From NCBI GenBank assembly GCA_950097015.1, contig CATNEN010000026.1, positions 868,001 to 932,000 of the forward strand: a DNA stretch of 64,000 bases, read 5' to 3'. Below the pieces are notes generated by a model that had not been told where the DNA came from, searched no databases, and saw only the letters and a program-made list of their open reading frames with translations. The position numbers and the translations under genes were made by a program. Source of the stretch: Macrostomum hystrix. Taxonomy: Eukaryota; Animalia; Platyhelminthes. Positions 28,801 through 57,582 of this stretch are shown here, piece after piece. Every line of letters starts with the position of its first letter. The first letter of the stretch is position 1.

Positions 28801-31800
28801 TCTCTCTCTCACTATCAATCTCTCTCTCACTATCAATCTCTCTCACTATCAATCTCTCTCACTATCAATCACTCTCACTATCAAGTATCAATCTCTCTCA
28901 CTATCAAGTATCAATCTCTCTCACTGTCAAAGTCTCTCTCACTATCAATCTCTCTCACTATCAATCTCTCTCTCACTATCAATCTCTCTCACTATCAATC
29001 TCTCTCACTATCAATCACTCTCACTATCAAGTATCAATCTCTCTCACTATCAAGTATCAATCTCTCTCACTGTCAAAGTCTCTCTCACTATCAATCTTTC
29101 TCTCACTATCAATCTCTCTCACTATCAATCTCTCTAACTATCAATCTCTCTCACTATCAATCTCTCTCACTATCAATGCCTCTCTCACTATCAATGTCTC
29201 TATCAATCTCTCTAACTGTCAATCTCTCTCTCACTATCAATGTCTTTCTCACTATCAATGTCTCTCTCACTATCAATCTCTCTCACTATCAATCTCTCTC
29301 ACTATCAATCTCTCTCTCAATCTCTCAATCTCACTATCAATCTCTCTCACTATCAATCTCTCTCACTATCAATCTCTCTCACTATCAATGTATCTCTCAC
29401 TATCAATGTATCTCTCACTATCAATCTCTCCCTCTCTCAAAACTGTTTAAGGTAGGGCAACTATCTGATAGGAAAACATCAATGCATTTGTATATGAATC
29501 CACAATTGTACTACGGGTGTGTCATAAGTAATGTCACTGTGGTTGTTGTGCGGGAACCCAAAGCAATAATCATCCAAATATATTATATTCTGAAAGTACA
29601 TTTATTGAGAAGTTGCCACCACACCTGAGCAGCAATTTTAATGTCTATGGCCAAAACTGTCGCAAGAATTTGTTAATCAGATTTAGCAAGTGCAACACGA
29701 TGAAATCTTCTTTTTGCAACGAGCAAAACTCAACATGAATCACGACAAGACGCACATCCAGTTCTACGCTTTCATTCGCTTCAAGCTTGGAAAATCTGCA
29801 CTTGAAGTAGAGGAGGATCTCCGGAACACACTGCCAGACAACTGCCCAACTCGCAGGACAATTTACAGGTGGTTTCAGAACTTTACTGATCCTGGGTTCG
29901 AATTGGGAGATGCCGCCAGATCTGGACGACCATGTTCAACCAGGACAATAGAGAACATCGAAGTCATCAGCGACCTGGTCAAGGAAGACCCGCGGCAGTG
30001 TCAGGGAGCTAGCGGACTGCTTGGAGATTGATTTCAAGACAGTCCATCGCATCTTGACAGAGGATCTCCATCTCCGAAACGTCTGCTCGGTCTGGGTACC
30101 CCATGACCTCACTGCGGACCAACGTCAGGCCCGGACCAACTGCCTGGCTGTTGAGGATGAGACCTGGCTCCACCTGGATGGCAAAAGCAGTAAGGCAGAC
30201 AATCGCTGCTGGCTGGGAGCTGGGGACTCCAGGCTGACTGTGACCAGGAGGTCCATCTCAGACAAGAAGACCATGCTGCTGGTGGCATTCACGCCAAACA
30301 AACGAGTCTCCATCTGTACAACTCCGCCAAACACCAAGGTCGATGGCCAGTACTTCATCGACTTTGTCCGACACACTGGGAACCTCTGGCGCACGCTCCG
30401 GTCAAACCCGATTCACCTGAACGAAGTTCTGTGGCAGATGGACAACGCACGGACCCACACCTGTCAGGCTGTTTCGGATTTTCTGGCTGGACAGCGAGTA
30501 AATCTGCTCTGGCAGAGTCCCTACAGCCCAGACTTCAACTTGTGCGACAGGTTTCTCTTTAAATGGCTGAAGGCAGACTTTTCCCAGAGAAGTTTCGCAA
30601 ACCATGATGAGGTCAAAGAAGCCGCGTTGCACTGGTTCCGACAGCTGGAGGAAAAACACCTGCAGGCTGAGGTAGAGAAGCTGTACGAGCACTGCCAGAG
30701 GGTGATTGATATTGGGGGACACTATGTTGTTGATTGATACAGTTTCGTTCATCTGCGATTGTTAGTTGGTCTGTTTTACCCTCAGTGACATTACTTATGA
30801 CACACCCGAAGTACAAACGCAGACCCTTCTGGGTTCTGAATCTTAGAGTTTTTAACTTTCGAAATTAATCAGATGACGAAGAATGTCCTATTCAGTAATA
30901 GAGTATATTTACTCCCGCTGTTTTCTGATTCAATTCAATTGTTAGTATTTGAACTCAAGGCTCACCTGATGGCCTGCACAACCCTATCGCAGCAGCAGCT
31001 GAGTACGGAGTCGCCGTTGACTGACACGACGATGTCGCCGCTGCGTATGCCGGCCAGGCCTGCTGCTGAACCGGCGTCAACTTTGCCAACACGGGTGGGC
31101 TGGGATCCAACCAGAGTGAAACCGTAGCCGCCATGGCAACTGCGAGACAGAGTGAACTGCGGGACAGGGGATTGGTTTGGCGACAGTCTGTGAGACGGTG
31201 GACCTGGAGAGTCAGGTGAGAACCCGATCTCTTCAGGTGAGAACCTGATCTCTTCAGGTCACAGTCTGATCTCTTCAGGTCACAGTCTGATCTCTTCAGG
31301 TCACAGTCTGATTGATCTCTTCAGGTCACAGTCTGATCTCTTCAGATCACAGTCGATCTCTTCAGGTAAGAACCTGATCTCTTCAGGTAAGAACCTGATC
31401 TCTTCAGGTAAGAACCTGATCTCTTCAGGTAAGAACCCGATCTCTTCAGGTGAGAACCCGATCTCTTCAGGTGAGAACCTGATCTCTTCAGGTCACAGTC
31501 TGATCTCTTCAGGTCACAGTCTGATCTCTTCAGGTCACAGTCTGATCTCTTCAGGTCACAGTCTGATCTCTTCAGATCACAGTCGATCTCTTCAGGTAAG
31601 AACCTGATCTCTTCAGGTAAGAACCTGATCTCTTCAGGTAAGAACCTGATCTCTTCAGGTAAGAACCTGATCTCTTCAGGTGAGAACCCGATCTCTTCAG
31701 GAAAGAATGCAGTCACCCAGCCCAAGAATTTTTCTCACCGTTCTCTGCTCAGTCCGTCCGCTTGGCTTGTCTCCAAGATCGTCTCCAAGGTTGACGACGC

Positions 31801-34800
31801 CGCACGGCGCGGCCAGAGCTGTCACGCTGGTCCCCGGAGCTGCCGCAGCCCCGGCCTCCTGGGTGCACCTCCTGTCGTGATCTGGAGCGCTGAGAACGAA
31901 GCGCCAGCCCTCATCCAACCCGTAGGGATCTTCTCCGTTTTCATCGTCGCCATCAGCCCGACTATTGTGCCGGCGTCTGAGGAACGCGCAGCCGGTGGGA
32001 GCCCTGAAAATTTTGATTATGCTCACAATTGAACACAATTGAATCACAACGGAACACTCCATCTCAGATCCTCAAATTGAAATCCCCATCGGAACACCAT
32101 CTCAGATCCTTAAATCGAAATCCCCATCGGAACACAGCACCTCAGATCCTTAAATCGAAATCCCCATCGGAACACAGCACCTCAGATCCTCAAATCGAAA
32201 TCCCCATCGGAACACAGCATCTCAGATCCTCAAATCGAAATCCGCATCGGTACACAGCATCTCAGATCCTGAAATCGAAATCCGCATCGGTACACAGCAT
32301 CTCAGATCCTCAAATCGAAATCCCCATCGGAACACAGCATCTCAGATCCTCAAATCGAAATCCCCATCGGAAGACTCCATCTCAGATCCTCAAATCGAAA
32401 TCCCATCGGAACACAGCATCTCAGATCCTCAAATCGAAATCCCCATCGGAACACAGCATCTCAGATCCTCAAATCGAAATCCCCATCGGAACACAGCATC
32501 TCAGATCCTCAAATCGAAATCCCATCGGAACACAGCATCTCAGATCCTCAAATCGAAATCCCCATCGGTACACAGCACCTCAGATCCTCAAATCGAAATC
32601 CCCATCGGAACACAGCATCTCAGATCCTCAAATCGAAATTCCCATCGGAACACAGCATCTCAGATCCTCAAATCGAAATCCCATCGGAACACAGCATCTC
32701 AGATCCTCAAATCGAAATCCCCATCGGTACACAGCACCTCAGATCCTCAAATCGAAATCCCCATCGGAACACAGCATCTCAGATCCTCAAATCGAAATCC
32801 CCATCGGAACACAGCACCTCAGATCCTCAAATCGAAATCCCCATCGGAACACAGCATCTCAGATCCTCAAATCGAAATCCCCATCGGAACACAGCATCTC
32901 AGATCCTCAAATTGAAATCCCCATCGGAACACAGCATCTCAGATCCTCAAATCGAAATCCCCATCGGAACACAGCATCTCAGATCCTCAAATTGAAATCC
33001 CCATCGGAACACAGCATCTCAGATCCTCAAATTGAAATCCCCATCGGAACACAGCATCTCAGATCCTCAAATTGAAATCCCCATCGGAACACAGCATCTC
33101 AGATCCTCAAATCGAAATCCCCATCGGAACACAGCATCTCAGATCCTCAAATCGAAATCCCCATCGGAACACAGCATCTCAGATCCTCAAATCGAAATCC
33201 CCATCGGAACACAGCACCTCAGATCCTCAAATCGAAATCCCCATCGGAACACAGCACCTCAGATCCTTAAATCGAAATCCCCATCGGAACACAGCATCTC
33301 AGATCCTCAAATCGAAATCCGCATCGGTACACAGCATCTCAGATCCTCAAATCGAAATCCCTATCGGAACACAGCATCTCAGATCCTCAAATCGAAATCC
33401 CCATCGGAATACAGCATCTCAGATCCTCAAATACAGCATTCTGAACTAACACAAGCTTCCCTGGCGGATTTATGAACTTTGGGTCTAATTTAGGCCAAAG
33501 AAACCAACTAAACCTCGCTTCGTTATTCACAACAGCAAACAGTGAACTGCGAAGTATTTTAGTTAAACCGCGCCATGTCCTCACACACTTGTGCTATCCA
33601 AAATCTGAGCCGGCCCGACCTGAAGACGACACCCGAACAGACAGCAATTTGTGCCTGCATTCGGTACTCTCTAACTTCTTAACTGAACTGGATTTGCACG
33701 GTGACAAAAACTGCACAACTAGTTTCCATGAAACTGTTTTGCTGGCGCGTGGGAAATTGCTGCGAAAAAAGGAAGAGAAAGGAAATAAGAAATCAAGCAA
33801 AATTACTGTCGACGGACTAGCAGTCGGTGGGTAGAGGGAACAGTAGTATCGTTTACTGCTACCGATTCCTATAGTTAGCGGGTGAGAAAATTTATAAATT
33901 GTCTATAATATGTTAAACACTGAAGTACGAGTAATTGGGAAGGGCCGAAGCTCTTTTGCAATTGAAAGCTGCGTCGAGCAATTGCTGCTTGGTCTCACTT
34001 GCTTGTACCATATAGAATTTCTATATTCTCTACGATTCTTCTTTTCTGTCATGCATTGTTCTTTTTATCCTCTCCTCTTCCCTTCTTTCCTTTCTCTCCT
34101 CTCCTATCGTTTCCTCTCCTGTCCTCCTCTCTCCTCTCCTGTCCTCTCCTCTCCTCTCCTCTCCTGTCCTCTCCTCTCCTCTCCTCTCCTGTCCTCTCCT
34201 CTCCTGTCCTCTCCTGTCCTCTCCTCTCCTCTCCTCTCCTCTCCTCTCCTGTCCTCTCCTCTCCTCTCCTCTCCTGTCCTCTCCTGTCCTGTCCTCTCCT
34301 CTCCTCTCCTGTCCTCTCCTCTTCTGTCCTCTCCTCTCCTCTCCTCTTCTGTCCTCTCCTCTCCTCTCCTCTCCTCTCCTCTCCTGTCCTCTCCTGTCCT
34401 GTCCTCTCCTCTCCTCTCCTGTCCTCTCCTCTTCTGTCCTCTCCTCTCCTCTCCTCTCCTGTCCTCTCCTGTCCTCTCCTCTCCTCTCCTGTCCTCTCCT
34501 CTCCTCTCCTGTCCTCTCCTCTCCTCTCCTCTCCTGTCCTCTCCTGTCCTGTCCTCTCCTCTCCTCTCCTGTCCTCTCCTCTTCTGTCCTCTCCTCTCCT
34601 CTCCTCTCCTGTCCTCTCCTGTCCTCTCCTGTCCTCTCCTGTCCTCTCCTCTCCTCTCCTGTCCTCTCCTCTCCTGTCCTCTCCTCTCCTCTCCTGTCCT
34701 CTCCTCTCCTGTCCTCTCCTCTCCTGTCCTCTCCTCTCCGCTCTTCTCCTCTCCTCTCCTCTCCTCTCCTCTCCTCTCCTCTCCTCTCCTCTCCTCTCCT

Positions 34801-35411
34801 CTCCTCTCCTGTCCTCTCCTCTCCTCTCCTGTTCTCTCCTCTTCTGTCCTCTCCTCTCCTCTCCTCTTCTGTCCTCTCCTCTCCTCTCCTCTTGTGTCCT
34901 CTCCTCTCCTCTCCTGTTCTCTCCTCTTCTGTCCTCTCCTCTCCTCTCCTCTTCTGTCCTCTCCTCTCCTCTCCTCTTGTGTCCTCTCCTCTCCTCTCCT
35001 CTTGTGTCCTCTCCTCTCCTCTCCTGTTCTCTCCTCTTCTGTCCTCTCTTCTCCTCTCCTCTCCTGTCCTCTCCTCTCCTGTCCTCTCCTCTGCCCTGAA
35101 ATGCCATTACCAAGCAGAGAGGCCACTCACGCATCAGCAGGCAGTCCGCCGGCTCGCCGCATCCGCTGCTGCAGCTGGCTCTGTCCATGCCGCTGCTGCT
35201 GCTGAACAAACTCTTCGTCTCTCATGCCTGTGAATGCTAGGTCACCGCCGCCGCCGCCGCCTCCGCCGCGGGCGCGGTCGCCGCTTCCGCTGCTGTAGTC
35301 GGAGCCAGATTCTGTCGAAGCTTCTTTCCGGAAGCAACTCAACGGTCTCAACAGTTTGCTGAGACCCGCCCGCCTGCGCTGCTGCTGCTGTTGCTGAACT
35401 GACGTTTGCAT
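22454..35411 (-). CDS. PDZ-DH(RhoGEF)-PH protein; exons 35411(ATG; acceptor at 35487)-35131, 32003-31739, 31156-30966, 24124-22967, 22886-22454
   Basis: All four introns are GT-AG and phase-consistent (2,0,2,2). The PDZ FTLSRSCHGGYGFTLVGSQPTRVGKVDAGSAAGLAGIRSGDIVVSVNG...VVQAIR|QSHGRLVIKVQR is completed across the intron. DH with SEEAFALTV..C..FY and EPLRHLRRL..IFHDLLEATPMSHYDH; PH ending RTLLLEAPSSEAKMLWRGCI; polyQ from (CAG)~16. Confidence 0.82.
24860..25160. repeat. 16-bp tandem repeat gagagatgagacacga
   Basis: Tandem copies. Confidence 0.9.
25690..26115. repeat. 22-bp tandem repeat ctcaaatccgctcccttctgat
   Basis: Tandem copies. Confidence 0.92.
26865..27890 (+). repeat. Minisatellite gattgatagtgagaga (left arm of an inverted pair)
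   Basis: 14-18-bp units; reverse complement of the array at 28355-29430. Confidence 0.93.
28355..29430 (-). repeat. Minisatellite tctctcactatcaatc (right arm of an inverted pair)
   Basis: Reverse complement of the array at 26865-27890. Confidence 0.93.
29511..30811 (+). mobile_element. mariner (DD34D) DNA transposon, 1301 bp
   Basis: 29-bp TIRs ctacgggtgtgtcataagtaatgtcactg (1 mismatch) with TA on both sides; encodes a mariner transposase. Confidence 0.93.
29735..30737 (+). pseudogene. mariner transposase, frameshifted near 30000-30030 with an apparent short internal deletion
   Basis: HTH TIYRWF..F, RSGRP, WVPHDL, DETW, DNARTH and YSPDFNLCD with 34-residue D-D spacing; split across two ORFs (29690-30031, 30021-30737). 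Confidence 0.9.
31215..31700. repeat. 21-bp minisatellite gatctcttcaggtaagaacct / gatctcttcaggtcacagtct
   Basis: Fills most of the intron between the exons at 31739 and 31156. Confidence 0.92.
32050..33435. repeat. 40-bp minisatellite cagcatctcagatcctcaaatcgaaatccccatcggaaca
   Basis: About 34 tandem copies. Confidence 0.95.
34070..35095. repeat. (CTCCT)n microsatellite with CTGTC variants
   Basis: Pure pyrimidine-rich tract of about 1 kb. Confidence 0.97.
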
Positions 35412-36029
35412 GAGTTTTCCAATGCTTGTAGCACTTGCTGCAATTGCTAGACTTTGTGTGGCTGGCAACTCGAGATCAGTCTGTATCTAAATAGACTAGG
35501 CCAGCCTTCTAAGCCACTGTCCCAGCTAGAAGACTGCAGATTGTAATTTCATTGGCTATATTCCTCTGCCTCCCAACTCCTTGTCTAAAATGGCAAGTCT
35601 GTAGTCTACGCCAGCCAATAGGAATCCATCGCTGACAGTAAAATGTGTCTATTTTTAGGTACAAACGTCATTTGATTTTGAATCTACCATTTAGCGTTGC
35701 AGAAAATGTCATACAATGAATACTCTACTCAATCCTTAACGCTATAAATACTATAAGGACAATTTTTATCGGACCCAAGCCCCGCTACTGATTCTGCTTG
35801 AATGAGTCATTGAAAATATTTAATTCTAATCTAGAATAGGCTTTCCTCTGTGACTATAGGTGTGTCCCGTGGGTTCTTATCAATGTGCACTGGAATCGCT
35901 GCTGCTGCAGTATCGGATGTGGGTACAGTGTGCGAGCCAATTCTATGAAGCAGACAGATTTTATTGTCTGTAAATAGTGCTGATATTTGCTATCATGCTG
36001 CAGGTGCCACCGACTGTGAGAAGAGGCTG

Positions 36030-36575
36030 GAAATGAGATAGATGAGGCTGGAAATGAGATAAATGAGGCTAGAAATGAGATAGATGAGGCTAGAAATGAG
36101 ATAGATGAGGCCATAAATGAGATGGATGAGGCTAGAAATGAGATGGATGAGGCTAGAAATGAGATAGATGAGGCTAGAAATGAGATGGATGAGGCTAGAA
36201 ATAAGATGGATGAGGCTAGAAATGAGATGGATGAGGCTAGAAATGAGATGGATGAGGCTAGAAATGAGATAAATGAGGCTAGAAATGAGATGGATGAGGC
36301 TAGAAATGAGATGGATGAGGCTAGAAATGAGATGGATGAGGCTAGAAATGAGATGGATGAGGCTAGAAATGAGATGGATGAGGCTAGAAATGAGATGGAT
36401 GAGGCTAGAAATGAGATGGATGAGGCTAGAAATGAGATAGATGAGGCTAGAAATGAGATGGATGAGGCTAGAAATGAGATGGATGAGGCTAGAAATGAGA
36501 TAGATGAGGCAAGAAATGAGATGGATGAGGCTAGAAATGAGATAGATGATGCAAGAAATGAGATGGATGATGCTA
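36030..36575 (+). repeat. 21-bp minisatellite gatgaggctagaaatgagatg (left arm of an inverted pair)
   Basis: Reverse complement of 37030-37710. Confidence 0.95.
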
Positions 36576-37029
36576 GCAATTAATAAGTAATCGAGATAAA
36601 AGCAACAGTAAATTCAGTTGAAGTTAAACCGAATCTCAAATGTTTATTGTTGAAAAACATTCTCTGGTTAGATCAAAGGTTAGTTTGCAAAATTAGTTTC
36701 GGCTTATAACTCTCTGCTTTCAGTTTTAAAACAGGTTTCAGCACGGTGCTATAACTGCTTCTGTAGCGGTGTTTTCCGAAATTTTCCATTGTAAAGGGGC
36801 CAGCAATTAATCAAAGCCTGGCTTGGCTAGACAACTCCACACAGCTTGACCCCCCTATCTAAGATGTCAAAAGTTTCTGCATTTTATTCATTCGTTTTGA
36901 CTCGAAAACGTTAACAGAGGGACTGTGTGTGGGTGTGTAGGCCAAGCTCGGTGTATTCTGTGCAACTGTACTGAATTGACTTCACTTGTGCTTCTGTCTT
37001 ATTTTAATTCATATATCATTCAATCTCTA

Positions 37030-37710
37030 CCTCATCTATTTCATATCTAGCCTCACCTATCTCATTTCTAGCCTCATCTCTTTCATTTCTAGCCTCACCT
37101 ATCTCATTTCTAGCCTCATCTCTTTCATTTCTAGCCTCACCTATCTCATTTCTAGCCTCATCTATCTCATTTCTAGCCTCATCCATCTCATTTCTAGCCT
37201 TATCTATCTCATTTCTAGCATCATTTATCTCATTTCTAGCTTCATTTATCTCATTTCTAGCCTCATCCATCTCATTTCTAGCCTCATCTATCTCATTTCT
37301 AGCCTTATCTATCTCATTTCTAGCATCATTTATCTCATTTCTAGCCTCATCCATCTCATTTCTAGCCTCACCTATCTCATTTCCAGCCTCACCCATCTCA
37401 TTTCTAGCCTCATCCATCTCATTTCTAGCCTCATCCATCTCATTTCTAGCCTCATCCATCTCATTTCTAGCCTCATCTATCTCATTTCTAGCCTCATCCA
37501 TCTCATTTCTAGCCTCATCCATCTCATTTCTAGCCTCATCTCATCTCATTTCCAGCCTCACCCATCTCATTTCTAGCCTCATCCATCTCATTTCTAGCCT
37601 CATCCATCTCATTTCTAGCCTCATCCATCTCATTTCTAGCCTCATCCATCTCATTTCTAGCCTCATCTCATCTCATTTCTAGCCTCATCCATCTCATTTC
37701 TAGCCTCTAA
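37030..37710 (-). repeat. 21-bp minisatellite catctcatttctagcctcatc (right arm of an inverted pair)
   Basis: Reverse complement of 36030-36575. Confidence 0.95.
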
Positions 37711-40069: not shown

Positions 40070-41115
40070 CAGAGGAGAGGAGAGGAGAGGAGAGGACAGG
40101 AGAGGAGAGGAGAGGAGAGGAGAGGAGAGGAGAGGAGAGGAGAGGAGAGGAGAGGAGAGGAGAGGAGAGGAGAGGAGAGGAGAGGAGAGGAGAGGAGAGG
40201 AGAGGAGAGGAGAGGAGAGGAGAGGAGAGGAGAGGAGAGGAGAGGAGAGGAGAGGAGAGGGGAGGAGAGGAGAGGAGAGTAGAGGAGAGGAGAGGAGAGT
40301 AGAGGACAGGAGAGGAGAGTAGAGGAGAGGAGAGGAGAGTAGAGGACAGGAGAGGAGAGGAGAGGAGAGGAGAGGAGAGGAGAGTAGAGGACAGGAGAGG
40401 AGAGTAGAGGACAGGAGAGGAGAGGAGAGGAGAGGAGAGGAGAGGAGAGGAGAGGAGAGGAGAGGAGAGGAGAGGAGAGGACAGGAGAGGAGAGTAGAGG
40501 ACAGGAGAGGAGAGGAGAGTAGAGGACAGGAGAGGAGAGGAGAGGAGAGGAGAGGGGAGGAGAGGAGAGGAGAGGAGAGGAGAGGACAGGAGAGGAGAGG
40601 AGAGGAGAGGAGAGGGGAGGAGAGGAGAGGAGAGGAGAGGAGAGGAGAGGAGAGTAGAGGACAGGAGAGGAGAGTAGAGGACAGGAGAGGAGAGGAGAGT
40701 AGAGGACAGGAGAGGAGAGGAGAGGAGAGGAGAGGGGAGGAGAGGAGAGGAGAGGAGAGGAGAGGAGAGGAGAGTAGAGGACAGGAGAGGAGAGGAGAGG
40801 AGAGGACAGGAGAGGACAGTAGAGGAGAGGACAGGAGAGGAGAGGGGAGGAGAGGAGAGGAGAGGAGAGGAGAGGAGAGGAGAGGAGAGGAGAGGAGAGG
40901 AGAGGAGAGGAGAGGAGAGGAGAGGGGAGGAGAGGAGAGGAGAGGAGAGGAGAGGAGAGGAGAGTAGAGGACAGGAGAGGAGAGGAGAGGAGAGGACAGG
41001 AGAGGACAGTAGAGGAGAGGACAGGAGAGGAGAGGGGAGGAGAGGAGAGGAGAGGAGAGGAGAGGAGAGGAGAGGAGAGGAGAGGAGAGGAGAGGAGAGG
41101 AGAGGAGAGGAGAGT
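40070..41115. repeat. (AGAGG)n microsatellite
   Basis: Purine tract, reverse complement in type to 34070-35095. Confidence 0.97.
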
Positions 41116-49699: not shown

Positions 49700-51450
49700 A
49701 CTAGTGACAGACAGTAGGATAGAGTGAAAGACAGTAGGATAGAGTGACAGACAGTAGGATAAAGTGACAGACAGTAAAATAGAGTGACAGACAGTAGGAT
49801 AGAGTGACAGACAGTAGGATAGAGTGACAGACAGTAGGATAGAGTCACAGACAGTAGGATAGAGTGACAGACAGTATGATAGAGTCACAGACAGTAGGAT
49901 AGAGTCACAGACGGTAGGACAGAGTCACAGACAGTAGGATAGATTGACAGACAGTAGGATAGAGTCACAGACAGTAGGATAGAGTGACAGACAGTAGGAT
50001 AGAGTCACAGACAGTAGGATAGAGTGACAGACAGTATGATAGAGTGATAGACAGTAGGATAGAGTGACAGACAGTAGGATAGAGTGACAGACAGTAGGAT
50101 AGAGTGACAGACAGTAGGATAGAGTCACAGACAGTAGGATAGAGTGACAGACAGTATGATAGAGTGACAGACAGTAGGACAGAGTGACAGACTGTAGGAT
50201 AGAGTGACAGACCGTAGGATAGAGTGACAGACGGTAGGATAGAGTGACAGACGGTAGGACAGAGTGACAGACTGTAAGATAGAGTGACAGACGGTAGGAT
50301 AGAGAGACAGACAGTAGGATAGAGTGACAGACTGTAGGATAGAGTGACAGACGGTAGGACAGAGTGACAGAACGTAGGATAGAGTGACAGACTGTAGGAC
50401 AGAGTGACAGAACGTAGGATAGAGTGACAGACTGTAGGATAGAGTGACAGACTGTAGGATAGAGTGACAGACGGTAGGACAGAGTGACAGAACGTAGGAT
50501 AGAGTGACAGACGGTAGGATAGAGTGACAGACAGTAGGATAGAGTGACAGACAGTAGGATAGAGTGACAGACGGTAGGATAGAGTTTCCGACAGTAGGAT
50601 AGAGTGACAGACAGTAGGATAGAGTCACAGACAGTAGGATAGAGTCACAGACAGTAGGATAGAGTCACAGACAGTAGGATAGAGTGACAGACAGTAGGAT
50701 AGAGTCACAGACAGTAGGATAGAGTGACAGACAATAGGATAGAGTGACAGACAATAGGATAGAGTCACAGACAGTAGGATAGAGTGACAGACAGTAGGAT
50801 AGAGTGACAGACAGTAGGATAGAGTGACAGACAGTAGGATAGAGTGACAGACAGTAGGATAGAGTCACAGACAGAAGGATAGAGTCACAGACAGTAGGAT
50901 AGAGTCACAGACAGTAGGATAGAGTGACAGACAGTAGGATAGAGTGACAGACAGTAGGATAGAGTGACAGACAGTAGGATAGAGTGACAGACAGTAGGAT
51001 AGAGTCACAGACAGTAGGATAGAGTGACAGACAGTAGGATAGAGTGACAGACAGTAGGATAGAGTGACAGACAGTAGGATAGAGTGACAGACAGTAGGAT
51101 AGAGTCACAGACAGTAGGATAGAGTGACAGACAGTAGGATAGAGTGACAGACAGTAGGATAGAGTCACAGACAGTAGGATAGAGTGACAGACAGTATGAT
51201 AGAGTGATAGACAGTAGGATAGAGTCACAGACAGCAGGATAGAGTGACAGACAGTAGGATAGAGTGACAGACAGTAGGATAGAGTGACAGACAGTAGGAT
51301 AGAGTCACAGACAGTAGGATAGAGTGACAGACAGTATGATAGAGTGATAGACAGTAGGATAGAGTCACAGACAGCAGGATAGAGTGACAGACAGCAGGAT
51401 AGAGTGACAGACAGCAGGATAGAGTGACAGACAGCAGGATAGAGTCACAA
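49700..51450. repeat. 20-bp minisatellite gacagacagtaggatagagt
   Basis: About 85 tandem copies. Confidence 0.96.
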
Positions 51451-52360
51451 ACTATTGAACGTTAAAGGATTTAAAAAGAGGCAACTCAATTTGCGGGCGC
51501 TCCAAATGCGTTACTCGTTATTACACCTAAATGATATGCTGTGTCACTCGCTAAGATTCGGCATCGAATGAATGAGCATGACGGGCAGCAGACAGTCGAA
51601 TCTGTTGCAATTAAAATTGCAAATTTATCGTTTGTGAAAATCGTGACAAATAACGAGATTTACTTTAAACAGAAAATTGTCTTTCTGATTATTCAAAGCC
51701 GACAACGTCGCCAAGAAGTGTTGACTAGCAGTCATGGATGGCACTACGTCTATTTTCGTCAGCAAACCGGCTCCCGACTCGCCTCACTTACTAAAGGAAC
51801 TTTCTTCATCCGATGACTGCGGTCCGTCGATTCTCCGCGTATCTAAAAATAGCTTTTGCCAATTATGTTCTTCAGCCAATAGCAGCGATGCAGGGTGGTT
51901 TCCCGATTCTGCCGAGTGTCTAAAAATAGCACAAACATAAACTTCTGACCATAGATACTAAAATAACCATAGTTTTTATATCTAGAGGCTAGAGTCACTC
52001 TAGCCTGTGACTCAAACCATATAAAAATAACCACGCCTTCTGCCTAAAGCCGGACATACAAAGGTATTCCCCGATTCTTTGAATGTCTAGAAGTAGGATG
52101 TCATTAACAATGAGATCAACGTTAATGAGTTTTTGATTATTTTAACTCTCAGACAATTACGATACTATTTATTTACCAGAGAAGAAACAATGCTAGGTCT
52201 TTGTCTATCTGTCTCCTCAAACGATTTTAGCTTATTTTTCATTTTATTTCATTTTCGCTGGTCAGACTAACTGGCCGTTTTGAGCCACAAAGTGTGGGAT
52301 AGCAGCAGTCATGTAGGTAGAGATTTTCAACGTATTAAGAAGTCCCCTGCACTGAAGTTC

Positions 52361-55300
52361 TCAGCGTCCGTAGCAGCTGATTGGGTGTAGAATACACCGA
52401 TAATCCATGCGCCTCTTTAGCCTCCGATCAAAGCCCACCAGCTGTAGCTCATGCTGCCCCCGTTGCTGCAGATTATCGTTGAATGCGGCGGAGTTCAGCG
52501 CTGTGTCCTCGGTGGCTGCGGCCTCCTGCACTGCTCGCTGAAGGTTGAATAAAATGTCAGAACAATGAGATGTGATGCTGTTGCTGGCCAACCTTTTAGC
52601 CCATACTTGTAGCCTGCTAGTCTAGTTTTAGAGCTTTGTACTTTTAAAAAATTATAACAAATATAATAATAATAAGTACAGTAGTGACACTGGACCCGCA
52701 GCCAGCGAGGAGGCAATTCTGCCCCTTTCGCTGACTCCTGAGCACACACGCACACAGATACTGTACGCAGGCATACGCTCACACAGGTGTGTACATCTGC
52801 CCTAACTTTCTCATACTCAGACAGTGTACACACCCACTGTGCCTTGGAGGTTGGCCCTCAAGGGCGTAAATTTCACGACAAGCCGCCAAGCCTTCTCTCC
52901 GCGGCTGCGCCCCAAATAAATGTGGCCTCGCCGCGGAATCGAGCTCAGGGACCTTGGTGCAGGAGTCAAAGGCGACCTCTTTTGACTGTTTGACTGAATT
53001 CTAACCATGTATAGCATAGCACAAAAGTATAACAAACTTTTGAACAGTAGGGTTCTCAGTGATTGTCTGTGCTTAGAGTCTGATCAATACTTGTCTGAGC
53101 TAATAATCTTCTTTATGCAAAGTTAAAGTTGAGTAAGCAAAAAAGGATTTCCTCTGAGAAAATGATTTCTGCTCAGTAAGAAGGATGAGCGAAGATTCTG
53201 CTCACACAGTAAGATGTAGTGATATTAGGTAGAGTGACAGACAGTGGGATAGAGTGACAGACGGTAGGACAGACGGTAGGACAGACGGTAGGACAGACGG
53301 TAGGACAGAGTGACAGACTGTAGGATAGAGTGACAGACGGTAGGACAGACTGACAGACTGTAGGATAGAGTGACAGACCGTAGGATAGAGTGACAGACGG
53401 TAGGATAGAGTGACAGACGGTAGGACAGAGTGACAGACTGTAGGATAGAGAGACAGACAGTAGGATAGAGTGACAGACGGTAGGACAGAGTGACAGAACG
53501 TAGGATAGAGTGACAGACGGTAGGACAGAGTGACAGAACGTAGGATAGAGTGACAGACTGTAGGATAGAGTGACAGACGGTAGGACAGAGTGACAGACGG
53601 TAGGGCAGAGTGACAAACCATAGGATAGAGTGACAGACCATAGGATAGAGTGACAGACCGTAGGATAGAGTGACAGACGGTAGGACAGAGTGACAGAACA
53701 TAGGATAGAGTGACAGAAAGTAGAATAGAGTGACGGACAGTAGGGTAGAGCAACAGTAGGAGTGAGTTGTCGCCGTAAGAATTTCGCGTGGGTGTGCAGG
53801 GCGGTAATTTTCGAGCAGGTGTGGAGACTCATGAGGCACCAAATAGCAGCCATAAACGGCTAGAGAACATAATAACTGATGGCAGGTGTGATTTGACGTG
53901 GAATTAATGAACGGACAGTTCCAGTGCTAAGGTGATTATCCCGCATCGTCAGTTCGCAGGTCGCAGCTAGCTAAAAACCACTTGGCCCCTTTCGTAGGTC
54001 CTCACAATTTCCCCCGACTAACCATTTAGGAGAAATGGCACTTTACCAAATTCCTAGCTCACACGCTGGGACACTTGACAAGCTCGTTTTATTGCCCGCT
54101 CTCACACACTTCTGCGTTGCATCTGTCTAGGCGTAATTAAAACTTGAGACTGGCTTCAAGCAATTAATGTGCCACCGAGTGCGCATTACTGACTTGGAGT
54201 GACAGGGAGAGACTGGAGAGTGACAGAGAGAGACTGGAGAGTGACTGGAGAGTGACGGAGTGGGAGAATGGAGAGTGACAGAGTGGGAGAATGGAGAGTG
54301 ACAGAGTGGGTGAATGGAGAGTGACAGAGTAGGAGAATAGAGAGTGACAGAGTAAGAGGATGGAGAGTGACAGAGTGGGAGAATGGAGAGTGACAGAGTA
54401 AGAGGATGGAGAGTGACAGAGTAGGAGAATGGAGAGTGACAGAGTAGGAGAATGGAGAGTGACAGAGTGGGAGAATGGAGAGTGACAGAGTAAGAGGATG
54501 GAGAGTGAAAGAGTGGGAGAATGGAGAGTGACAGAGTAAGAGGATGGAGAGTGACAGAGTAGGAGAATAGAGAGTGACAGAGTAGGAGAATGGAGAGTGA
54601 CAGAGTGGGAGAATGGAGAGTGACAGAGTGGGAGAATGGAGAGTGACAGAGTAGGAGAATAGAGAGTGACAGAGTAAGAGGATGGAGAGTGACAGAGTGG
54701 GAGAATGGAGAGTGACAGAGTAAGAGGATGGAGAGTGACAGAGTAGGAGAATAGAGAGTGACAGAGTAGGAGAATGGAGAGTGACAGAGTGGGAGAATGG
54801 AGAGTGACAGAGTAAGAGGATGGAGAGTGACAGAGTGGGAGAATGGAGAGTGACAGAGTAAGAGGATGGAGAGTGACAGAGTAGGAGAATAGAGAGTGAC
54901 AGAGTAGGAGAATGGAGAGTGACAGAGTGGGAGAATGGAGAGTGACAGAGTGGGAGAATGGAGAGTGACAGAGTAGGAGAATGGAGAGTGACAGAGTGGG
55001 AGAATGGAGAGTGACAGAGTGGGAGAATGGAGAGTGACAGAGTGGGAGAATAGAGAGTGACAGAGTAGGAGAATGGAGAGTGACAGAGTGGGAGAATGGA
55101 GAGTGACAGAGTGGGAGAATGGAAATTGACAGAGTGGTAGAATGGAGAGTGACAGAGTAGGAGAATGGAGAGTGACAGAGTGAGAGAATGGAGAGTGACA
55201 GAGTGAGAGAATGGAGAGTGACAGAGTGGGAGAATGGAGATTGACAGAGTGGGAGAATGGAGAGTGACAGAGTAGGAGAATGGAGAGTGGCAGAGTGAGA

Positions 55301-57582
55301 GAATGGAGAGTGACAGAGTGGGAGAATGGAGAGTGACAGAGTGGGAGAATGGAGAGTGACAGAGTAGGAGAATGGAGAGTGACAGAGTGGGAGAATGGAG
55401 AGTGACAGAGTGGGAGAATGGAGAGTGACAGAGTGGGAGAATAGAGAGTGACAGAGTAGGAGAATGGAGAGTGACAGAGTGGGAGAATGGAGAGTGACAG
55501 AGTGGGAGAATGGAAATTGACAGAGTGGGAGAATGGAGAGTGACAGAGTAGGAGAATGGAGAGTGACAGAGTGAGAGAATGGAGAGTGACAGAGTGAGAG
55601 AATGGAGAGTGACAGAGTGGGAGAATGGAGAGTGACAGAGTGGGAGAATGGAGAATGACAGAGTGGGAGAATGGAGAGTGACAGAGTGTGAGAATGGAGA
55701 GTGACAGAGTGGGAGAATGGAGAGTGACAGAGTGGGAGAATGGAGAGTGACAGAGTGGGAGAATGGAGAGTGACAGAGTGGGAGAATGGAGAGTGACAGA
55801 GTGAGAGAATGGAGAGTGACAGAGTGTGAGAATGGAGAGTGACAGAGTGGGAGAATGGAGAATGACAGAGTGGGAGAATGGAGAGTGACAGAGTGGGAGA
55901 ATGGAGAGTGACAGAGTGGGAGAATGGAGAGTGACAGAGTGGGAGAATGGAGAGTGTGTCAGAGACCCCAGTAGATGTGAAGTGAGAGAATCTTGGAGGC
56001 AGGATTAGCTATCTTTATTTAAAGATTTCTTATCCGCACTTCGAGAAATAAAGTGGAAGGCAGCCATAGCAGATTAGAATAAGCTCGGGAGCGGCCTGAA
56101 AAGGTTTGAATAGAGCCTCCGATTCCCAAATCACCTATAAATAACTTTTTCTCTTCCGCGGCTCGAAGCAGATGAGGTTAGCAACGGCAGTGGTAGTCAA
56201 AGGACCTTATCCCAAGCCGACTTCTAGTCTTCCGATTGCAGATTTTTATCCCAAACTGAGCGTCCCAAATAATGAGGAATTATACCGAGCAGAAGAATAA
56301 AAAGAGTCCGCCATCCACATTGGAAGATATTCTCCAGCGGCGAGCCGCCAAGCACCGAGTTGTGTTTTCGTACCGAAATTTCACAGCCAAATACTTCTAA
56401 AACAAACTAACTGATCATTACAGACTGGGCCTAGAAATTTCACAGCCGGATACTTCTGGAACAGACTAACTGATCATTACAGACTGGGCCTAGAAATTTC
56501 ACAACCAAATACTTCTGGAACAAACTAACTGATCATTACAGACTGGGCCTAGAAATTTCACAGCCGGATACTTCTGGAACAGACTAACTGATCATTACAG
56601 ACTGGGCCTAGAAATTTCACAGCCAAATACTTCTGGAACAGACTAACTGATCATTACAGACTGGGCCTAGAAATTTCACAGCCAAATACTTCTGGAACAG
56701 ACTAACTGATCATTACAGACTGGGCCTAGAAATTTCACAGCCGGATACTTCTGGAACAAACTAACTGATCATTACAGACTGGGCCTAGAAATTTCACAGC
56801 CGGATACTTCTGGAACAAACTAACTGATCATTACAGACTGGGCCTAGAAATTTCACAGCCAAATACTTCTGGAACAAACTAACTGATCATTACAGACTGG
56901 GCCTAGAAATTTCACAGCCTGATACTTCTGGAACAGACTAACTGATCATTACAGACTGGGCCTAGATATAGATTTGATCTTTTGAGCAGGGCAACTCAAA
57001 ATGACCATGATCATGACCAAACTCTCATGACTGGTGCTCCACTATGACCAAACTCTCATGACTGGTGCTCCACTATGACCAAACTCTCATGACTGGTGCT
57101 CCACTATGACCAAACTCTCATGACTGGTGCTCCACTATGACCAAACTCTCATGACTGGTGCTCCACTATGACCAAACTCTCATGACTGGTGCTCCACTAT
57201 GACCAAACTCTCATGACTGGTGCTCCACTATGACCAAACTCTCATGACCGTTGCTCTACTATGACCAAACTCTCATGACCGTTGCTCTACTATCAGCAAA
57301 TTCTACACCTGTACACATGTTCAGTCCATGGACTGGAGGGTTTCTATCCATGGGTAATAATTGTACTTGTTACACAGCCGGTTGAAATAAAGCCAGGCGA
57401 AATGAGTGTTTTAATGACACAAATCATTTTTTTATCGTCTCGAAAATAACTACGAGCTTCGCTACATGTTACAATCTCACCCAGTAAGACCGTCGGACTG
57501 CACTCTCCATTGGCCTGGCTTCGCATAGCAACTGTGCCGCGGCTAGCAGGAAGAAAATACTCAACAGGCAGTTGAGTCTCAT
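52361..57582 (-). CDS. Allatostatin-C-like neuropeptide precursor (92 aa); exons 57582-57481 and 52537-52361
   Basis: Exon 1 is MRLNCLLSIFFLLAAAQLLCEA-RPMESAVRRSYW (hydrophobic signal peptide) with donor GTGAGA. Exon 2 follows ttcaaccttcag in the same phase 0 and ends KRR-MDYRCILHPISCY-GR-stop, giving C-X6-C, a PISC motif and a Gly-Arg amidation signal. Confidence 0.82.
52660..52990 (-). mobile_element. tRNA-derived SINE family B
   Basis: On the minus strand reads ...caccaaggtccctgagctcgattccgcggcgaggccacatttatttggggc..., homologous to 45150-45430; (TTA)n-like tail. Confidence 0.78.
53230..53750. repeat. 20-bp minisatellite, same family as 49700-51450
   Basis: gacagacggtaggatagagt variants in the same orientation. 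Confidence 0.94.
54195..55955. repeat. 23-bp minisatellite gagagtgacagagtgggagaatg
   Basis: About 75 tandem copies in the neuropeptide intron. Confidence 0.96.
56380..56970. repeat. 59-bp tandem repeat, ~10 copies
   Basis: agaaatttcacagccggatacttctggaacagactaactgatcattacagactgggcct. Confidence 0.95.
57010..57295. repeat. 31-bp tandem repeat tatgaccaaactctcatgactggtgctccac
   Basis: About 9 copies. Confidence 0.94.

What the first reader, a model, noticed from the sequence alone, without database searches (positions are those of the whole stretch)
52361..57582. Hidden allatostatin-C/somatostatin-type neuropeptide gene spanning four minisatellite arrays
Seen: a 102-nt signal-peptide exon (not in the ORF track in this frame) splices in phase across a 4.9-kb, mostly repeat intron to an exon ending ...FDRRLKRR-MDYRCILHPISCY-GR*. 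Known: AstC peptides have C-X6-C with a PISCF-like end (e.g. CYFNPISCF), are often amidated in lophotrochozoans, and act on somatostatin-receptor-like GPCRs. Inference: the mature peptide is (R)MDYRCILHPISCY-amide with one disulfide. Additional RR sites could release a second, acidic peptide starting SYW. Such a short split ORF is easily missed by annotation, so it may be an unrecognised flatworm AstC; I cannot verify whether it has been described.
Basis: partly seen in the sequence, partly recalled or inferred. Interest (0 to 1): 0.78.

Follow-up and report, generated by a model that had tools for sequence, protein, structure and literature searches.

The report
Flatworm allatostatin-C-type neuropeptide gene
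This is a real two-exon gene of a Macrostomum flatworm for a small secreted precursor that should release a 13-residue ring peptide of the allatostatin-C (invertebrate somatostatin-like) kind; it is a sound but fairly ordinary addition, because the sister species' copy already carries the automatic name "Allatostatin" in UniProt.

Summary
On the minus strand, a 102-nt exon (57582-57481) encodes a signal peptide and ends at a GTGAG donor. It joins in phase 0, across a 4,943-nt intron that is 63% minisatellite, to a 177-nt exon (52537-52361) ending KRR-MDYRCILHPISCY-GR-stop.

The gene model is supported by conservation, not by RNA. A 94-aa M. lignano protein has the same layout and an identical last 15 residues, while the rest has diverged. 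Two paralogues in this genome (contigs C2 and C39) have the same two-exon, phase-0 structure and cores of RCILHPISCYG and SCLFHPVSCYG, differing mainly by synonymous codons.

The allatostatin-C reading is well supported:
- a single C-terminal peptide after a dibasic site;
- a C-x6-C ring with a PISC-aromatic end;
- the phase-0 intron typical of somatostatin/AstC genes;
- ESM Atlas nearest clusters named Allatostatin C;
- two somatostatin-receptor-like GPCR genes in the genome.

A conserved Gly predicts C-terminal amidation. Published mollusc AstCs lack it, but arthropod AstCCC has it. The proposed second "SYW" peptide rests on an RR site that is not conserved.

Novelty is limited: one M. lignano entry is already auto-named "Allatostatin" in UniProt, though I found no paper describing a flatworm AstC. 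Other first-stage notes in this scan flag AstC-like genes elsewhere in this genome.

The parts
57481..57582 (-). Exon 1 coding part (34 codons): start ATG, signal peptide, and the conserved end motif V-R-x-[ST]-[YF]-W
   Evidence: Translation. Hydrophobic core checked. The motif is shared with paralogue B and with M. lignano P0001.
57523..57582 (-). Predicted signal peptide, about residues 1-16 to 1-20 (MRLNCLLSIFFLLAAA/QLLC); the cleavage point is inferred only
   Evidence: Arg at position 2, then a core of about 17 hydrophobic residues and an A-A-A small-residue run. SignalP was not available.
57472..57480 (-). Splice donor GTGAGATTG, phase 0
   Evidence: Paralogue B has GTGAGACTC at the same codon position.
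52538..57480 (-). Intron, 4,943 nt, 63% minisatellite
57013..57304 (.). Minisatellite, 31-nt unit x 9.4
56375..56966 (.). Minisatellite, 59-nt unit x 10
54246..55956 (.). Minisatellite, 23-nt unit x 74
53226..53750 (.). Minisatellite, 20-nt unit x 26.5; same family and orientation as the array at 49703-51449 downstream of the gene
   Evidence: unit identity 0.95 in direct orientation.
52538..52562 (-). Pyrimidine-rich tract and AG acceptor (TTCTGACATTTTATTCAACCTTCAG)
52361..52537 (-). Exon 2 coding part (58 codons plus stop): acidic and Gln-rich spacer, cleavage site, peptide, amidation signal
   Evidence: alignment.
52409..52417 (-). K-R-R prohormone-convertase site
   Evidence: M. lignano has RRRKRR, paralogue B has KRQR and paralogue C has KR.
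52370..52408 (-). Mature peptide MDYRCILHPISCY (Cys5-Cys12 ring, C-x6-C)
   Evidence: Identical in M. lignano P0001 and P0002. The core is invariant in paralogue B with 2 synonymous codon changes.
52364..52369 (-). Gly-Arg: amidation donor plus a basic residue to be trimmed
   Evidence: The Gly is invariant in all four precursors: GR, G-stop, GK, GR.
52243..52248 (-). AATAAA polyadenylation signal candidate
   Evidence: Read; function inferred.

Best explanation
This is a functional two-exon gene for a 92-residue prepropeptide of the allatostatin-C / somatostatin-type family in a Macrostomum flatworm.

Shown:
- The two exons have canonical splice sites and a phase-0 junction.
- The layout is signal peptide, then a fast-evolving acidic/Gln-rich spacer, then KRR, then MDYRCILHPISCY, then Gly-Arg and a stop.
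- The peptide is strictly conserved in a second species and in two paralogues.

Inferred:
- The signal peptide is removed in the ER.
- A prohormone convertase cuts after KRR.
- Carboxypeptidase E removes the terminal Arg.
- Peptidylglycine amidating monooxygenase turns Tyr-Gly into Tyr-amide.
- The two cysteines close an 8-residue ring.
- The 13-residue cyclic amide is secreted by neurons or endocrine cells.
- It acts on a somatostatin/AstC-receptor-like class A GPCR, probably with an inhibitory (Gi/o-type) effect as in other animals. Two candidate receptor genes are in this genome, on contigs C29 and C14.
For: Exons and splice sites.

Orthologue: M. lignano P0001 (PAA75984.1/PAA80541.1, 94 aa) has the same architecture. 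Its last 15 residues are identical, while the alignment as a whole is only about 58% identical.

Paralogue B (C2):
- exon 1 is ...DVRDTYW|GTGAGA;
- the phase-0 intron is 2,411 nt;
- exon 2 is RTV...KRQR-YDFRCILHPISCY-G*;
- the core differs from the window gene by 2 synonymous changes only.

Paralogue C (C39): a signal-peptide exon, a 76-nt phase-0 intron, then ...KR-VESSKPTEKQIGEVDTSCLFHPVSCY-GK-VISFDEE*.

Family hallmarks from papers:
- a single peptide at the C-terminus of the precursor, and C-x6-C (PMC8786951);
- the PISCF motif (PMC8514136; crab pQIRYHQCYFNPISCF, PMC8449533);
- mollusc AstCs end in C-Y (PMC8786951; bioRxiv 10.64898/2026.02.18.706622);
- a phase-0 intron in the N-terminal part of SS/AstC genes (PMC7536072).

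Database leads:
- ESM Atlas nearest clusters to P0001 are 'Prohormone-1-like' (0.93), 'Allatostatin C' (0.93) and 'Allatostatin C, isoform A' (0.90).
- With exon 2 alone, 'Allatostatin C' scores 0.82 and Somatostatin PF03002 scores 0.79.
- UniProt auto-names one M. lignano entry 'Allatostatin'.

Receptors: the open frames L026:1420-2655 and L025:1318-2676 have somatostatin receptors as their best solved-structure matches (3.3e-39 and 3.6e-31).
Against:
- No profile library recognises the protein (Pfam).
- Homology to AstC rests on a 9-residue motif plus architecture, which cannot reach statistical significance by sequence alone.
- Ring position 3 is His, not the Asn reported as conserved in protostomes outside cephalopods (bioRxiv 10.64898/2026.02.18.706622).
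- The C-terminal amide is absent from the published mollusc AstCs.
- The receptor assignment is only a best hit to solved structures, not a phylogeny. It could equally mark the separate protostome SSRP-like receptor (bioRxiv 10.1101/2021.11.05.463867).
- The site of expression is unknown.
Confidence: 0.8

Rival explanations
1. It is a real secreted disulfide-ring amide, but lineage-specific or from another ring-peptide family (CCHamide/excitatory peptide, urotensin/SSRP-like, elevenin) that merely converged on a PISC-aromatic end.
For: No significant sequence match to any AstC precursor: the word searches found only M. lignano, or nothing, and Pfam found nothing. His replaces the conserved Asn. 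The amide is unusual for AstC proper. Urotensin II and calcitonin clusters also appear in the Atlas lists.
Against: - The published SSRP-like peptides have a 4-residue ring with a W-K motif (bioRxiv 10.1101/2021.11.05.463867), which is absent here.
- From my own knowledge, CCHamides lie directly after the signal peptide and carry a tail after the second Cys. Here the peptide is at the precursor's end and stops one residue after the ring.
- Ring size, P-I/V-S-C-aromatic end, peptide position, single copy and phase-0 intron all match AstC together.
- The AstC clusters rank first.
Confidence: 0.12
2. It is an AstC-type gene used outside the nervous system, as a paracrine, gland or immune peptide rather than a classical neuropeptide.
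For: Insect AstCC is described as probably paracrine and is expressed in haemocytes (PMC4237046). The mollusc AstC-like gene is broadly expressed and responds to an immune challenge (PMC8514136). No expression data exist for this locus.
Against: Nothing here speaks against it. This is a variant of the main reading (same molecule, different cells), not an alternative to the family assignment.
Confidence: 0.05
3. It is a chance pairing of two short open frames in a repeat-rich region, or a dead gene copy.
For: There is no transcript evidence. The gene sits in a window that is 43% minisatellite. Each exon is short.
Against: - The 15-residue C-terminus is identical in another species although the spacer has diverged.
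- The exon-1 end motif and the donor are shared with paralogue B.
- Only synonymous differences occur in the core.
- Frames, splice sites and the poly(A) signal are intact.
Confidence: 0.03

Closest known systems
Arthropod allatostatin C (e.g. crab pQIRYHQCYFNPISCF, PMC8449533; 'PISCF' peptides, PMC8514136)
   Same: - A short precursor with one peptide at its C-terminal end after a dibasic site.
- A C-x6-C ring.
- P-I-S-C plus an aromatic last residue.
- A basic residue just before or near the first Cys.
- If paralogue B is cut after KR, it would start with Gln, have 15 residues and place six residues before the ring, like the crab peptide.
   Different: Tyr replaces Phe at the end. Ile-Leu-His replaces Tyr-Phe-Asn in the ring. 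A conserved Gly predicts a C-terminal amide. There is one intron only; Drosophila and C. elegans AstC genes have a second, phase-2 intron (PMC7536072).
Arthropod allatostatin CCC (SYWKQCAFNAVSCFamide, PMC8449533)
   Same: C-x6-C ring, x-V/I-S-C-aromatic end, and a C-terminal amide.
   Different: Ala replaces Pro at ring position 4. Orthology to a particular arthropod paralogue cannot be inferred.
Mollusc AstC-like peptides (Aplysia SHYSSMCMFNVVACY, PMC8786951; Octopus AVITACYFQAVSCY, bioRxiv 10.64898/2026.02.18.706622)
   Same: Spiralian lineage. C-x6-C ring, last residue Tyr, one peptide per precursor. The cyclic form is the more potent agonist of AstC receptors.
   Different: The mollusc peptides are not amidated. 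Molluscs usually have one precursor gene (PMC8514136), whereas this genome has at least three.
Macrostomum lignano A0A1I8HTR2 / PAA75984.1 (94 aa)
   Same: It is the orthologue: same architecture, identical KRRMDYRCILHPISCYGR end, and the same V-R-x-S-[YF]-W motif at the position of the exon junction.
   Different: The signal peptide and spacer have diverged strongly. It is a database prediction carrying only the automatic name 'Allatostatin' or 'hypothetical protein'. I found no paper on it.
Vertebrate somatostatin/cortistatin
   Same: [quoted passage not shown] The receptor candidates here resemble SSTRs.
   Different: The vertebrate ring has 10 residues with an F-W-K core (PMC8786951, PMC7536072). 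There is no sequence similarity in the peptide, and vertebrate somatostatin is not amidated.

Membership tests
Allatostatin-C / somatostatin-type neuropeptide precursors | Short secreted precursor (N-terminal signal peptide) | tested here: met
   Exon 1 has Arg2 and a hydrophobic core with a 12-residue KD mean of 2.70. Fewer than 1% of background open frames reach 2.5. The two paralogues and M. lignano show the same. SignalP was not run.
Allatostatin-C / somatostatin-type neuropeptide precursors | A single bioactive peptide at the C-terminal end of the precursor, preceded by a basic cleavage site (PMC8786951, PMC7536072) | tested here: met
   KRR-peptide-GR-stop. M. lignano has RRRKRR, paralogue B has KRQR and paralogue C has KR. 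Paralogue C has a 7-residue tail after GK.
Allatostatin-C / somatostatin-type neuropeptide precursors | Two cysteines separated by six residues (PMC8786951) | tested here: met
   C-ILHPIS-C here, in paralogue B and in M. lignano; C-LFHPVS-C in paralogue C.
Allatostatin-C / somatostatin-type neuropeptide precursors | PISCF-like C-terminal motif, with the aromatic residue directly after the second Cys as the last residue (PMC8514136, PMC8449533) | tested here: met
   PISCY and PVSCY. Tyr in this position also occurs in Aplysia and Octopus AstC (PMC8786951; bioRxiv 10.64898/2026.02.18.706622).
Allatostatin-C / somatostatin-type neuropeptide precursors | Asn at the third ring position (reported as conserved in protostomes, Gln in cephalopods; bioRxiv 10.64898/2026.02.18.706622) | tested here: not met
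   His in all four Macrostomum sequences. Because cephalopods also deviate, I treat this as a frequent feature rather than a strictly defining one.
Allatostatin-C / somatostatin-type neuropeptide precursors | [quoted passage not shown] | tested here: met
   Phase-0 intron after codon 34 (window gene), codon 35 (paralogue B) and codon 32 (paralogue C).
Allatostatin-C / somatostatin-type neuropeptide precursors | Statistically significant sequence or profile similarity to known members | tested here: inconclusive
   Pfam shows no hit. The word searches found only M. lignano or nothing. ESM Atlas feature search puts AstC clusters first at 0.93/0.93/0.90 for P0001, but only at 0.82 for exon 2 alone. 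This is a lead, not an E-value.
Allatostatin-C / somatostatin-type neuropeptide precursors | Cognate receptor of the SSTR/AstC-receptor clade present, and activated by the peptide | tested here: inconclusive
   Presence: two intronless GPCR open frames have somatostatin receptors as their best solved-structure hits. L026 hits SSTR1 at 3.3e-39 against galanin R1 at 2.4e-31; L025 hits SSTR2 at 3.6e-31. No phylogeny was possible because I had no reference AstC-R sequences. Activation is not testable with these tools.
Arthropod AstCCC-like (amidated) subtype | C-terminal amide | not testable with these tools
   A Gly follows the last Tyr in all four precursors, itself followed by R, K or the stop. 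Amidation is predicted from this and needs mass spectrometry.

The most novel reading that the evidence does not exclude
Macrostomum carries a three-gene family of C-terminally amidated AstC-type ring peptides (C-[IL]-[LF]-H-P-[IV]-S-C-Y-amide) together with SSTR-like receptors. This would be the first AstC/somatostatin-type signalling system documented in Platyhelminthes. It would also suggest that the amidated form, so far known from arthropod AstCCC, is old in protostomes rather than an arthropod novelty.
Probability: 0.45. Interest if true: 0.5.

Novelty: new member of a known kind. Interest (0 to 1): 0.4.

Why it matters
Flatworm neuropeptide catalogues are dominated by amidated linear peptides, and a 2022 helminth review still lists somatostatin-type peptides in helminths as 'Unknown' (PMC9042389).

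A clear AstC-type gene family in a free-living model genus, with candidate receptors in the same genome, fills a gap in the map of bilaterian peptide systems. It also gives a directly testable ligand-receptor pair: a synthetic cyclic amide against two cloned GPCRs.

The predicted amide bears on whether the amidated AstCCC type or the free-acid AstC type is ancestral.

The finding is incremental. The family is known from arthropods, nematodes, molluscs, annelids, nemerteans and brachiopods, and an automatic pipeline has already put the name on the M. lignano orthologue.

Tried and rejected
- **Pfam** scans of both exons, both paralogue exons and the M. lignano protein gave only noise.
- **Word-based protein search** with exon 2 found the M. 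lignano protein only. With paralogue C it found no candidate.
I therefore obtained no M. lignano locus and no transcript contigs.
- **Exon 1 of paralogue B** was not found by protein search. It was found by scanning for ATG, a hydrophobic core and a phase-0 GT.
- **The GPCR next to paralogue B** (L004 1237-2263) was checked as a possible linked receptor. Its best hits are rhodopsins and its frame is broken, so it was rejected.
- **GPCR L017 (C25) and its two relatives** have galanin receptors as best hits, narrowly ahead of opioid receptors and SSTR2. They are more likely AstA/galanin-type and were not used as AstC-receptor candidates.
- **Other matches to the peptide DNA pattern** (L007/L011, L008, L009, L012, L013, L015) lack a precursor context.
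- **Literature:** the string CILHPISCY occurs in no held paper. 'Allatostatin C' combined with flatworm or Platyhelminthes gave no description of a flatworm AstC. McVeigh 2009 and Koziol 2016 are not held, so a prior description there cannot be excluded.
- **The large representative-protein search** was not run. A conserved core of about 11 residues cannot reach significance in 1.8 billion proteins, and the claim does not rest on absence of relatives.
All searches were made exon by exon, by reference.


Full report
**1. What is in the sequence**

All features below are on the minus strand.

- An ATG at 57582 opens 34 codons, MRLNCLLSIFFLLAAAQLLCEARPMESAVRRSYW. They end exactly at a GTGAGATTG donor.
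- After the pyrimidine-rich tract TTCTGACATTTTATTCAACCTTCAG, a second open stretch starts at 52537. It reads RAVQEAAATEDTALNSAAFNDNLQQRGQHELQLVGFDRRLKRRMDYRCILHPISCYGR and stops at 52363-52361.
- Both exon edges fall between codons, so the intron is phase 0.
- The intron is 4,943 nt. Four tandem arrays with units of 20, 23, 59 and 31 nt fill 3,120 nt, or 63%.
- An AATAAA lies at 52248-52243, about 115 nt after the stop.
- The exon-1 hydrophobic core has a 12-residue Kyte-Doolittle mean of 2.70. Only 0.9% of 434 other ATG-started open frames in the window reach 2.5.

The arrays are not special to this gene. The whole window holds 37 arrays covering 43% of its length.

**2. Is the gene real?**

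The case therefore rests on conservation, which is strong.

*(a) Orthologue in M. lignano.*
- A word search with exon 2 returned one protein, M. lignano P0001. It is 94 aa, accessions PAA75984.1 and PAA80541.1, labelled 'hypothetical protein BOX15_Mlig009589g1/g2'.
- It reads: signal peptide, ...GRVRQSFW, AVSAD..., RRRKRR, MDYRCILHPISCYGR.
- The last 15 residues are identical to the window gene. The spacer and signal peptide have diverged.
- The residues SFW-AV lie where the window gene has its exon junction (SYW|RAV).

*(b) Paralogue B on contig C2 of this genome*.
- Exon 1 is MRTAATAVPLCLLLACLLPACSTAMPSSDVRDTYW, followed by GTGAGACTC.
- The phase-0 intron is 2,411 nt.
- Exon 2 is RTVRKF..., then a poly-Gln run, then VVQKRQR-YDFRCILHPISCY-G-stop.
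- The exon-1 end motif V-R-x-[ST]-[YF]-W, the GTGAGA donor and the R-[AT]-V start of exon 2 all match the window gene.
- In the core RCILHPISCYG the two genes differ by two synonymous changes only (CGG/CGC and CTA/CTG). Outside the core they can hardly be aligned.

*(c) Paralogue C on contig C39*.
- Exon 1 is MAVKLFASLAVALLLTVVADVSNGLRLQKDAK, followed by GTAAGT.
- The phase-0 intron is 76 nt.
- Exon 2 ends ...RLKR-VESSKPTEKQIGEVDTSCLFHPVSCY-GK-VISFDEE-stop.
- The core keeps C, H, P, S, C, Y and G through different codons, including a switch of Ser codon family.

*(d) Genome-wide count.* The DNA pattern for C-x3-P-[IV]-S-C-[YF]-G has 10 matches in 220 Mb, against 0 for the reversed control. Three of the ten carry this full precursor layout.

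A peptide held constant while its precursor drifts is the signature of a processed bioactive peptide.

**3. What kind of peptide?**

The hallmarks of allatostatin C given in the literature are:
- a precursor with one peptide, placed at its C-terminal end after a basic site;
- two cysteines six residues apart (PMC8786951, PMC7536072);
- a PISCF-type end (PMC8514136; crab pQIRYHQCYFNPISCF, PMC8449533).

Mollusc members end in C-Y: Aplysia SHYSSMCMFNVVACY (PMC8786951) and Octopus AVITACYFQAVSCY (bioRxiv 10.64898/2026.02.18.706622). [quoted passage not shown]

All of these are met here: C-ILHPIS-C-Y and C-LFHPVS-C-Y, a terminal position, KRR/KR sites, and a phase-0 intron after codons 32-35.

One feature is not met. 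Ring position 3 is His rather than the Asn reported as conserved in protostomes. Cephalopods also deviate there, with Gln.

Sequence statistics cannot decide the matter for so short a motif. Pfam gives nothing. The language-model look-alike search gives leads only:
- With the M. lignano protein, the three nearest clusters are arthropod 'Prohormone-1-like' (0.93, 191 shared features), 'Allatostatin C' (0.93) and 'Allatostatin C, isoform A' (0.90). Urotensin II clusters follow.
- With exon 2 alone, the signal is weaker: 'Allatostatin C' at 0.82 and Somatostatin PF03002 at 0.79.

UniProt's automatic naming calls one M. lignano entry (UniRef100_A0A1I8HTR2, P0002) 'Allatostatin'. It differs from P0001 by two spacer residues.

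**4. Processing and action (inferred)**

- Signal peptidase should cut near residue 16-20.
- A convertase should cut after K-R-R.
- Carboxypeptidase E should remove the final Arg.
- The Gly is invariant in all four precursors (GR, G-stop, GK, GR). It should be used to amidate Tyr.
- The two Cys should form the ring.
- The N-terminus could be Met or Arg-Met.

It does occur in arthropod AstCCC, SYWKQCAFNAVSCFamide (PMC8449533).

If paralogue B is cut after KR, it would start with Gln and have 15 residues with six before the ring. That is the format of arthropod pQ-AstC.

The suggested second peptide 'SYW...' depends on an RR that is RQ in M. lignano and RD in paralogue B, so cleavage there is doubtful. 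The V-R-x-[ST]-[YF]-W motif itself is conserved and remains unexplained.

**5. Receptors**

I scanned the genome for relatives of a gamma-type rhodopsin GPCR and compared open frames with solved structures. Two intronless genes have somatostatin receptors as their best matches:
- L026 (C29) hits SSTR1 at 3.3e-39, with the best galanin receptor at 2.4e-31.
- L025 (C14) hits SSTR2 at 3.6e-31.

A third group (L017 on C25 and its relatives) is marginally closer to galanin receptors and is more likely AstA-type.

A plausible receptor class is therefore present. Without reference AstC receptors I could not make a tree. The separate protostome SSRP-like receptor (bioRxiv 10.1101/2021.11.05.463867) is not excluded for these genes.

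**6. Rivals**

- *Chance or a dead gene.* This is very unlikely given section 2.
- *Convergence from another ring-peptide family.* This cannot be excluded formally. However, published SSRP-like peptides have a 4-residue ring with W-K. From my own knowledge, CCHamides sit directly after the signal peptide and carry a tail after the second Cys. Neither fits.
- *Non-neuronal use.* Whether the peptide is neuronal or paracrine is open.

**7. Novelty**

- No held paper contains the peptide string.
- Searches combining allatostatin C with flatworm terms gave no description.
- A helminth review lists somatostatin in helminths as 'Unknown' (PMC9042389).
- Two key flatworm neuropeptide surveys, McVeigh 2009 and Koziol 2016, are not held.
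- The M. lignano orthologue already carries an automatic 'Allatostatin' name.

I therefore rate this a new member of a known kind, with modest interest: a clean AstC-type three-gene family, probably amidated, with candidate receptors, in a phylum where the system has not, to my knowledge, been written up.

Other first-stage notes of this scan flag AstC-like genes elsewhere in this genome. By its length, s1-388066 is probably paralogue B. s1-405194 was not examined.

Noticed in passing
window 1-64000: The whole window is a field of minisatellites. There are 37 TRF arrays, with units of 14-59 nt and mostly 20-90 copies, covering 43% of the 64 kb. The neuropeptide gene is one of the few unique islands.
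   Followed up: partly
window 26857-27887 vs 28351-29434; 36023-36580 vs 37026-37707; 34068-35092 vs 40071-41114: Three pairs of neighbouring arrays have units that are reverse complements of each other (identity 1.0, 0.95 and 1.0). They form inverted array pairs whose origin is unexplained.
   Followed up: partly
window 49703-51449 and 53226-53750: The same 20-nt minisatellite family, in the same orientation, lies on both sides of exon 2. The 23-nt array at 54246-55956 shares its GAGTGACAGA core.
   Followed up: partly
window 57481-57498 (exon-1 end); L004 7274-7291; P0001 residues 28-33: The motif V-R-x-[ST]-[YF]-W at the end of exon 1 is conserved between the window gene, paralogue B and M. 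lignano. The dibasic site inside it is not conserved, and paralogue C lacks the motif. Its function is unknown; it could be a sorting or processing signal.
   Followed up: partly
L002 1372-1593 and L004 7187-7291 (G000:C2:2397786-2400523): Paralogue B is an AstC-type gene whose spacer holds an uninterrupted run of 20 Gln codons. Its predicted product is (pQR)YDFRCILHPISCY-amide.
   Followed up: yes
L014 1146-1557 (G000:C39:6654957-6655368): Paralogue C is an AstC-type gene with a 76-nt intron. It has a long N-terminal extension before the ring (26-residue predicted peptide) and a 7-residue acidic tail after Gly-Lys.
   Followed up: yes
L026 1420-2655 (G000:C29) and L025 1318-2676 (G000:C14): Two intronless class A GPCR genes whose best solved-structure matches are somatostatin receptors. 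They are candidate receptors for the AstC-type peptides.
   Followed up: partly
L017 1084-2430 (G000:C25:433609-434955), L022, L023/L024: A small family of GPCRs with TM7 motif LAYMNSC[VM]NPI[IV]YAF. Galanin receptors are their best hits, narrowly ahead of opioid receptors and SSTR2, so they are probably AstA/galanin-type. The C38 copy has stop codons in its first part.
   Followed up: partly
L004 1237-2263 (G000:C2, about 5 kb upstream of paralogue B): A rhodopsin/opsin-like GPCR reading frame is split over two frames, by either a frameshift or a short intron. It sits next to the neuropeptide paralogue, and the adjacency is probably coincidental.
   Followed up: partly
L007 and L011 (G000:C2:3383981 and C32:1765607): Two identical copies of an open frame containing ACPNGPVSCYGK, with no precursor context. 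This is probably a dispersed repeat and not a peptide gene.
   Followed up: no
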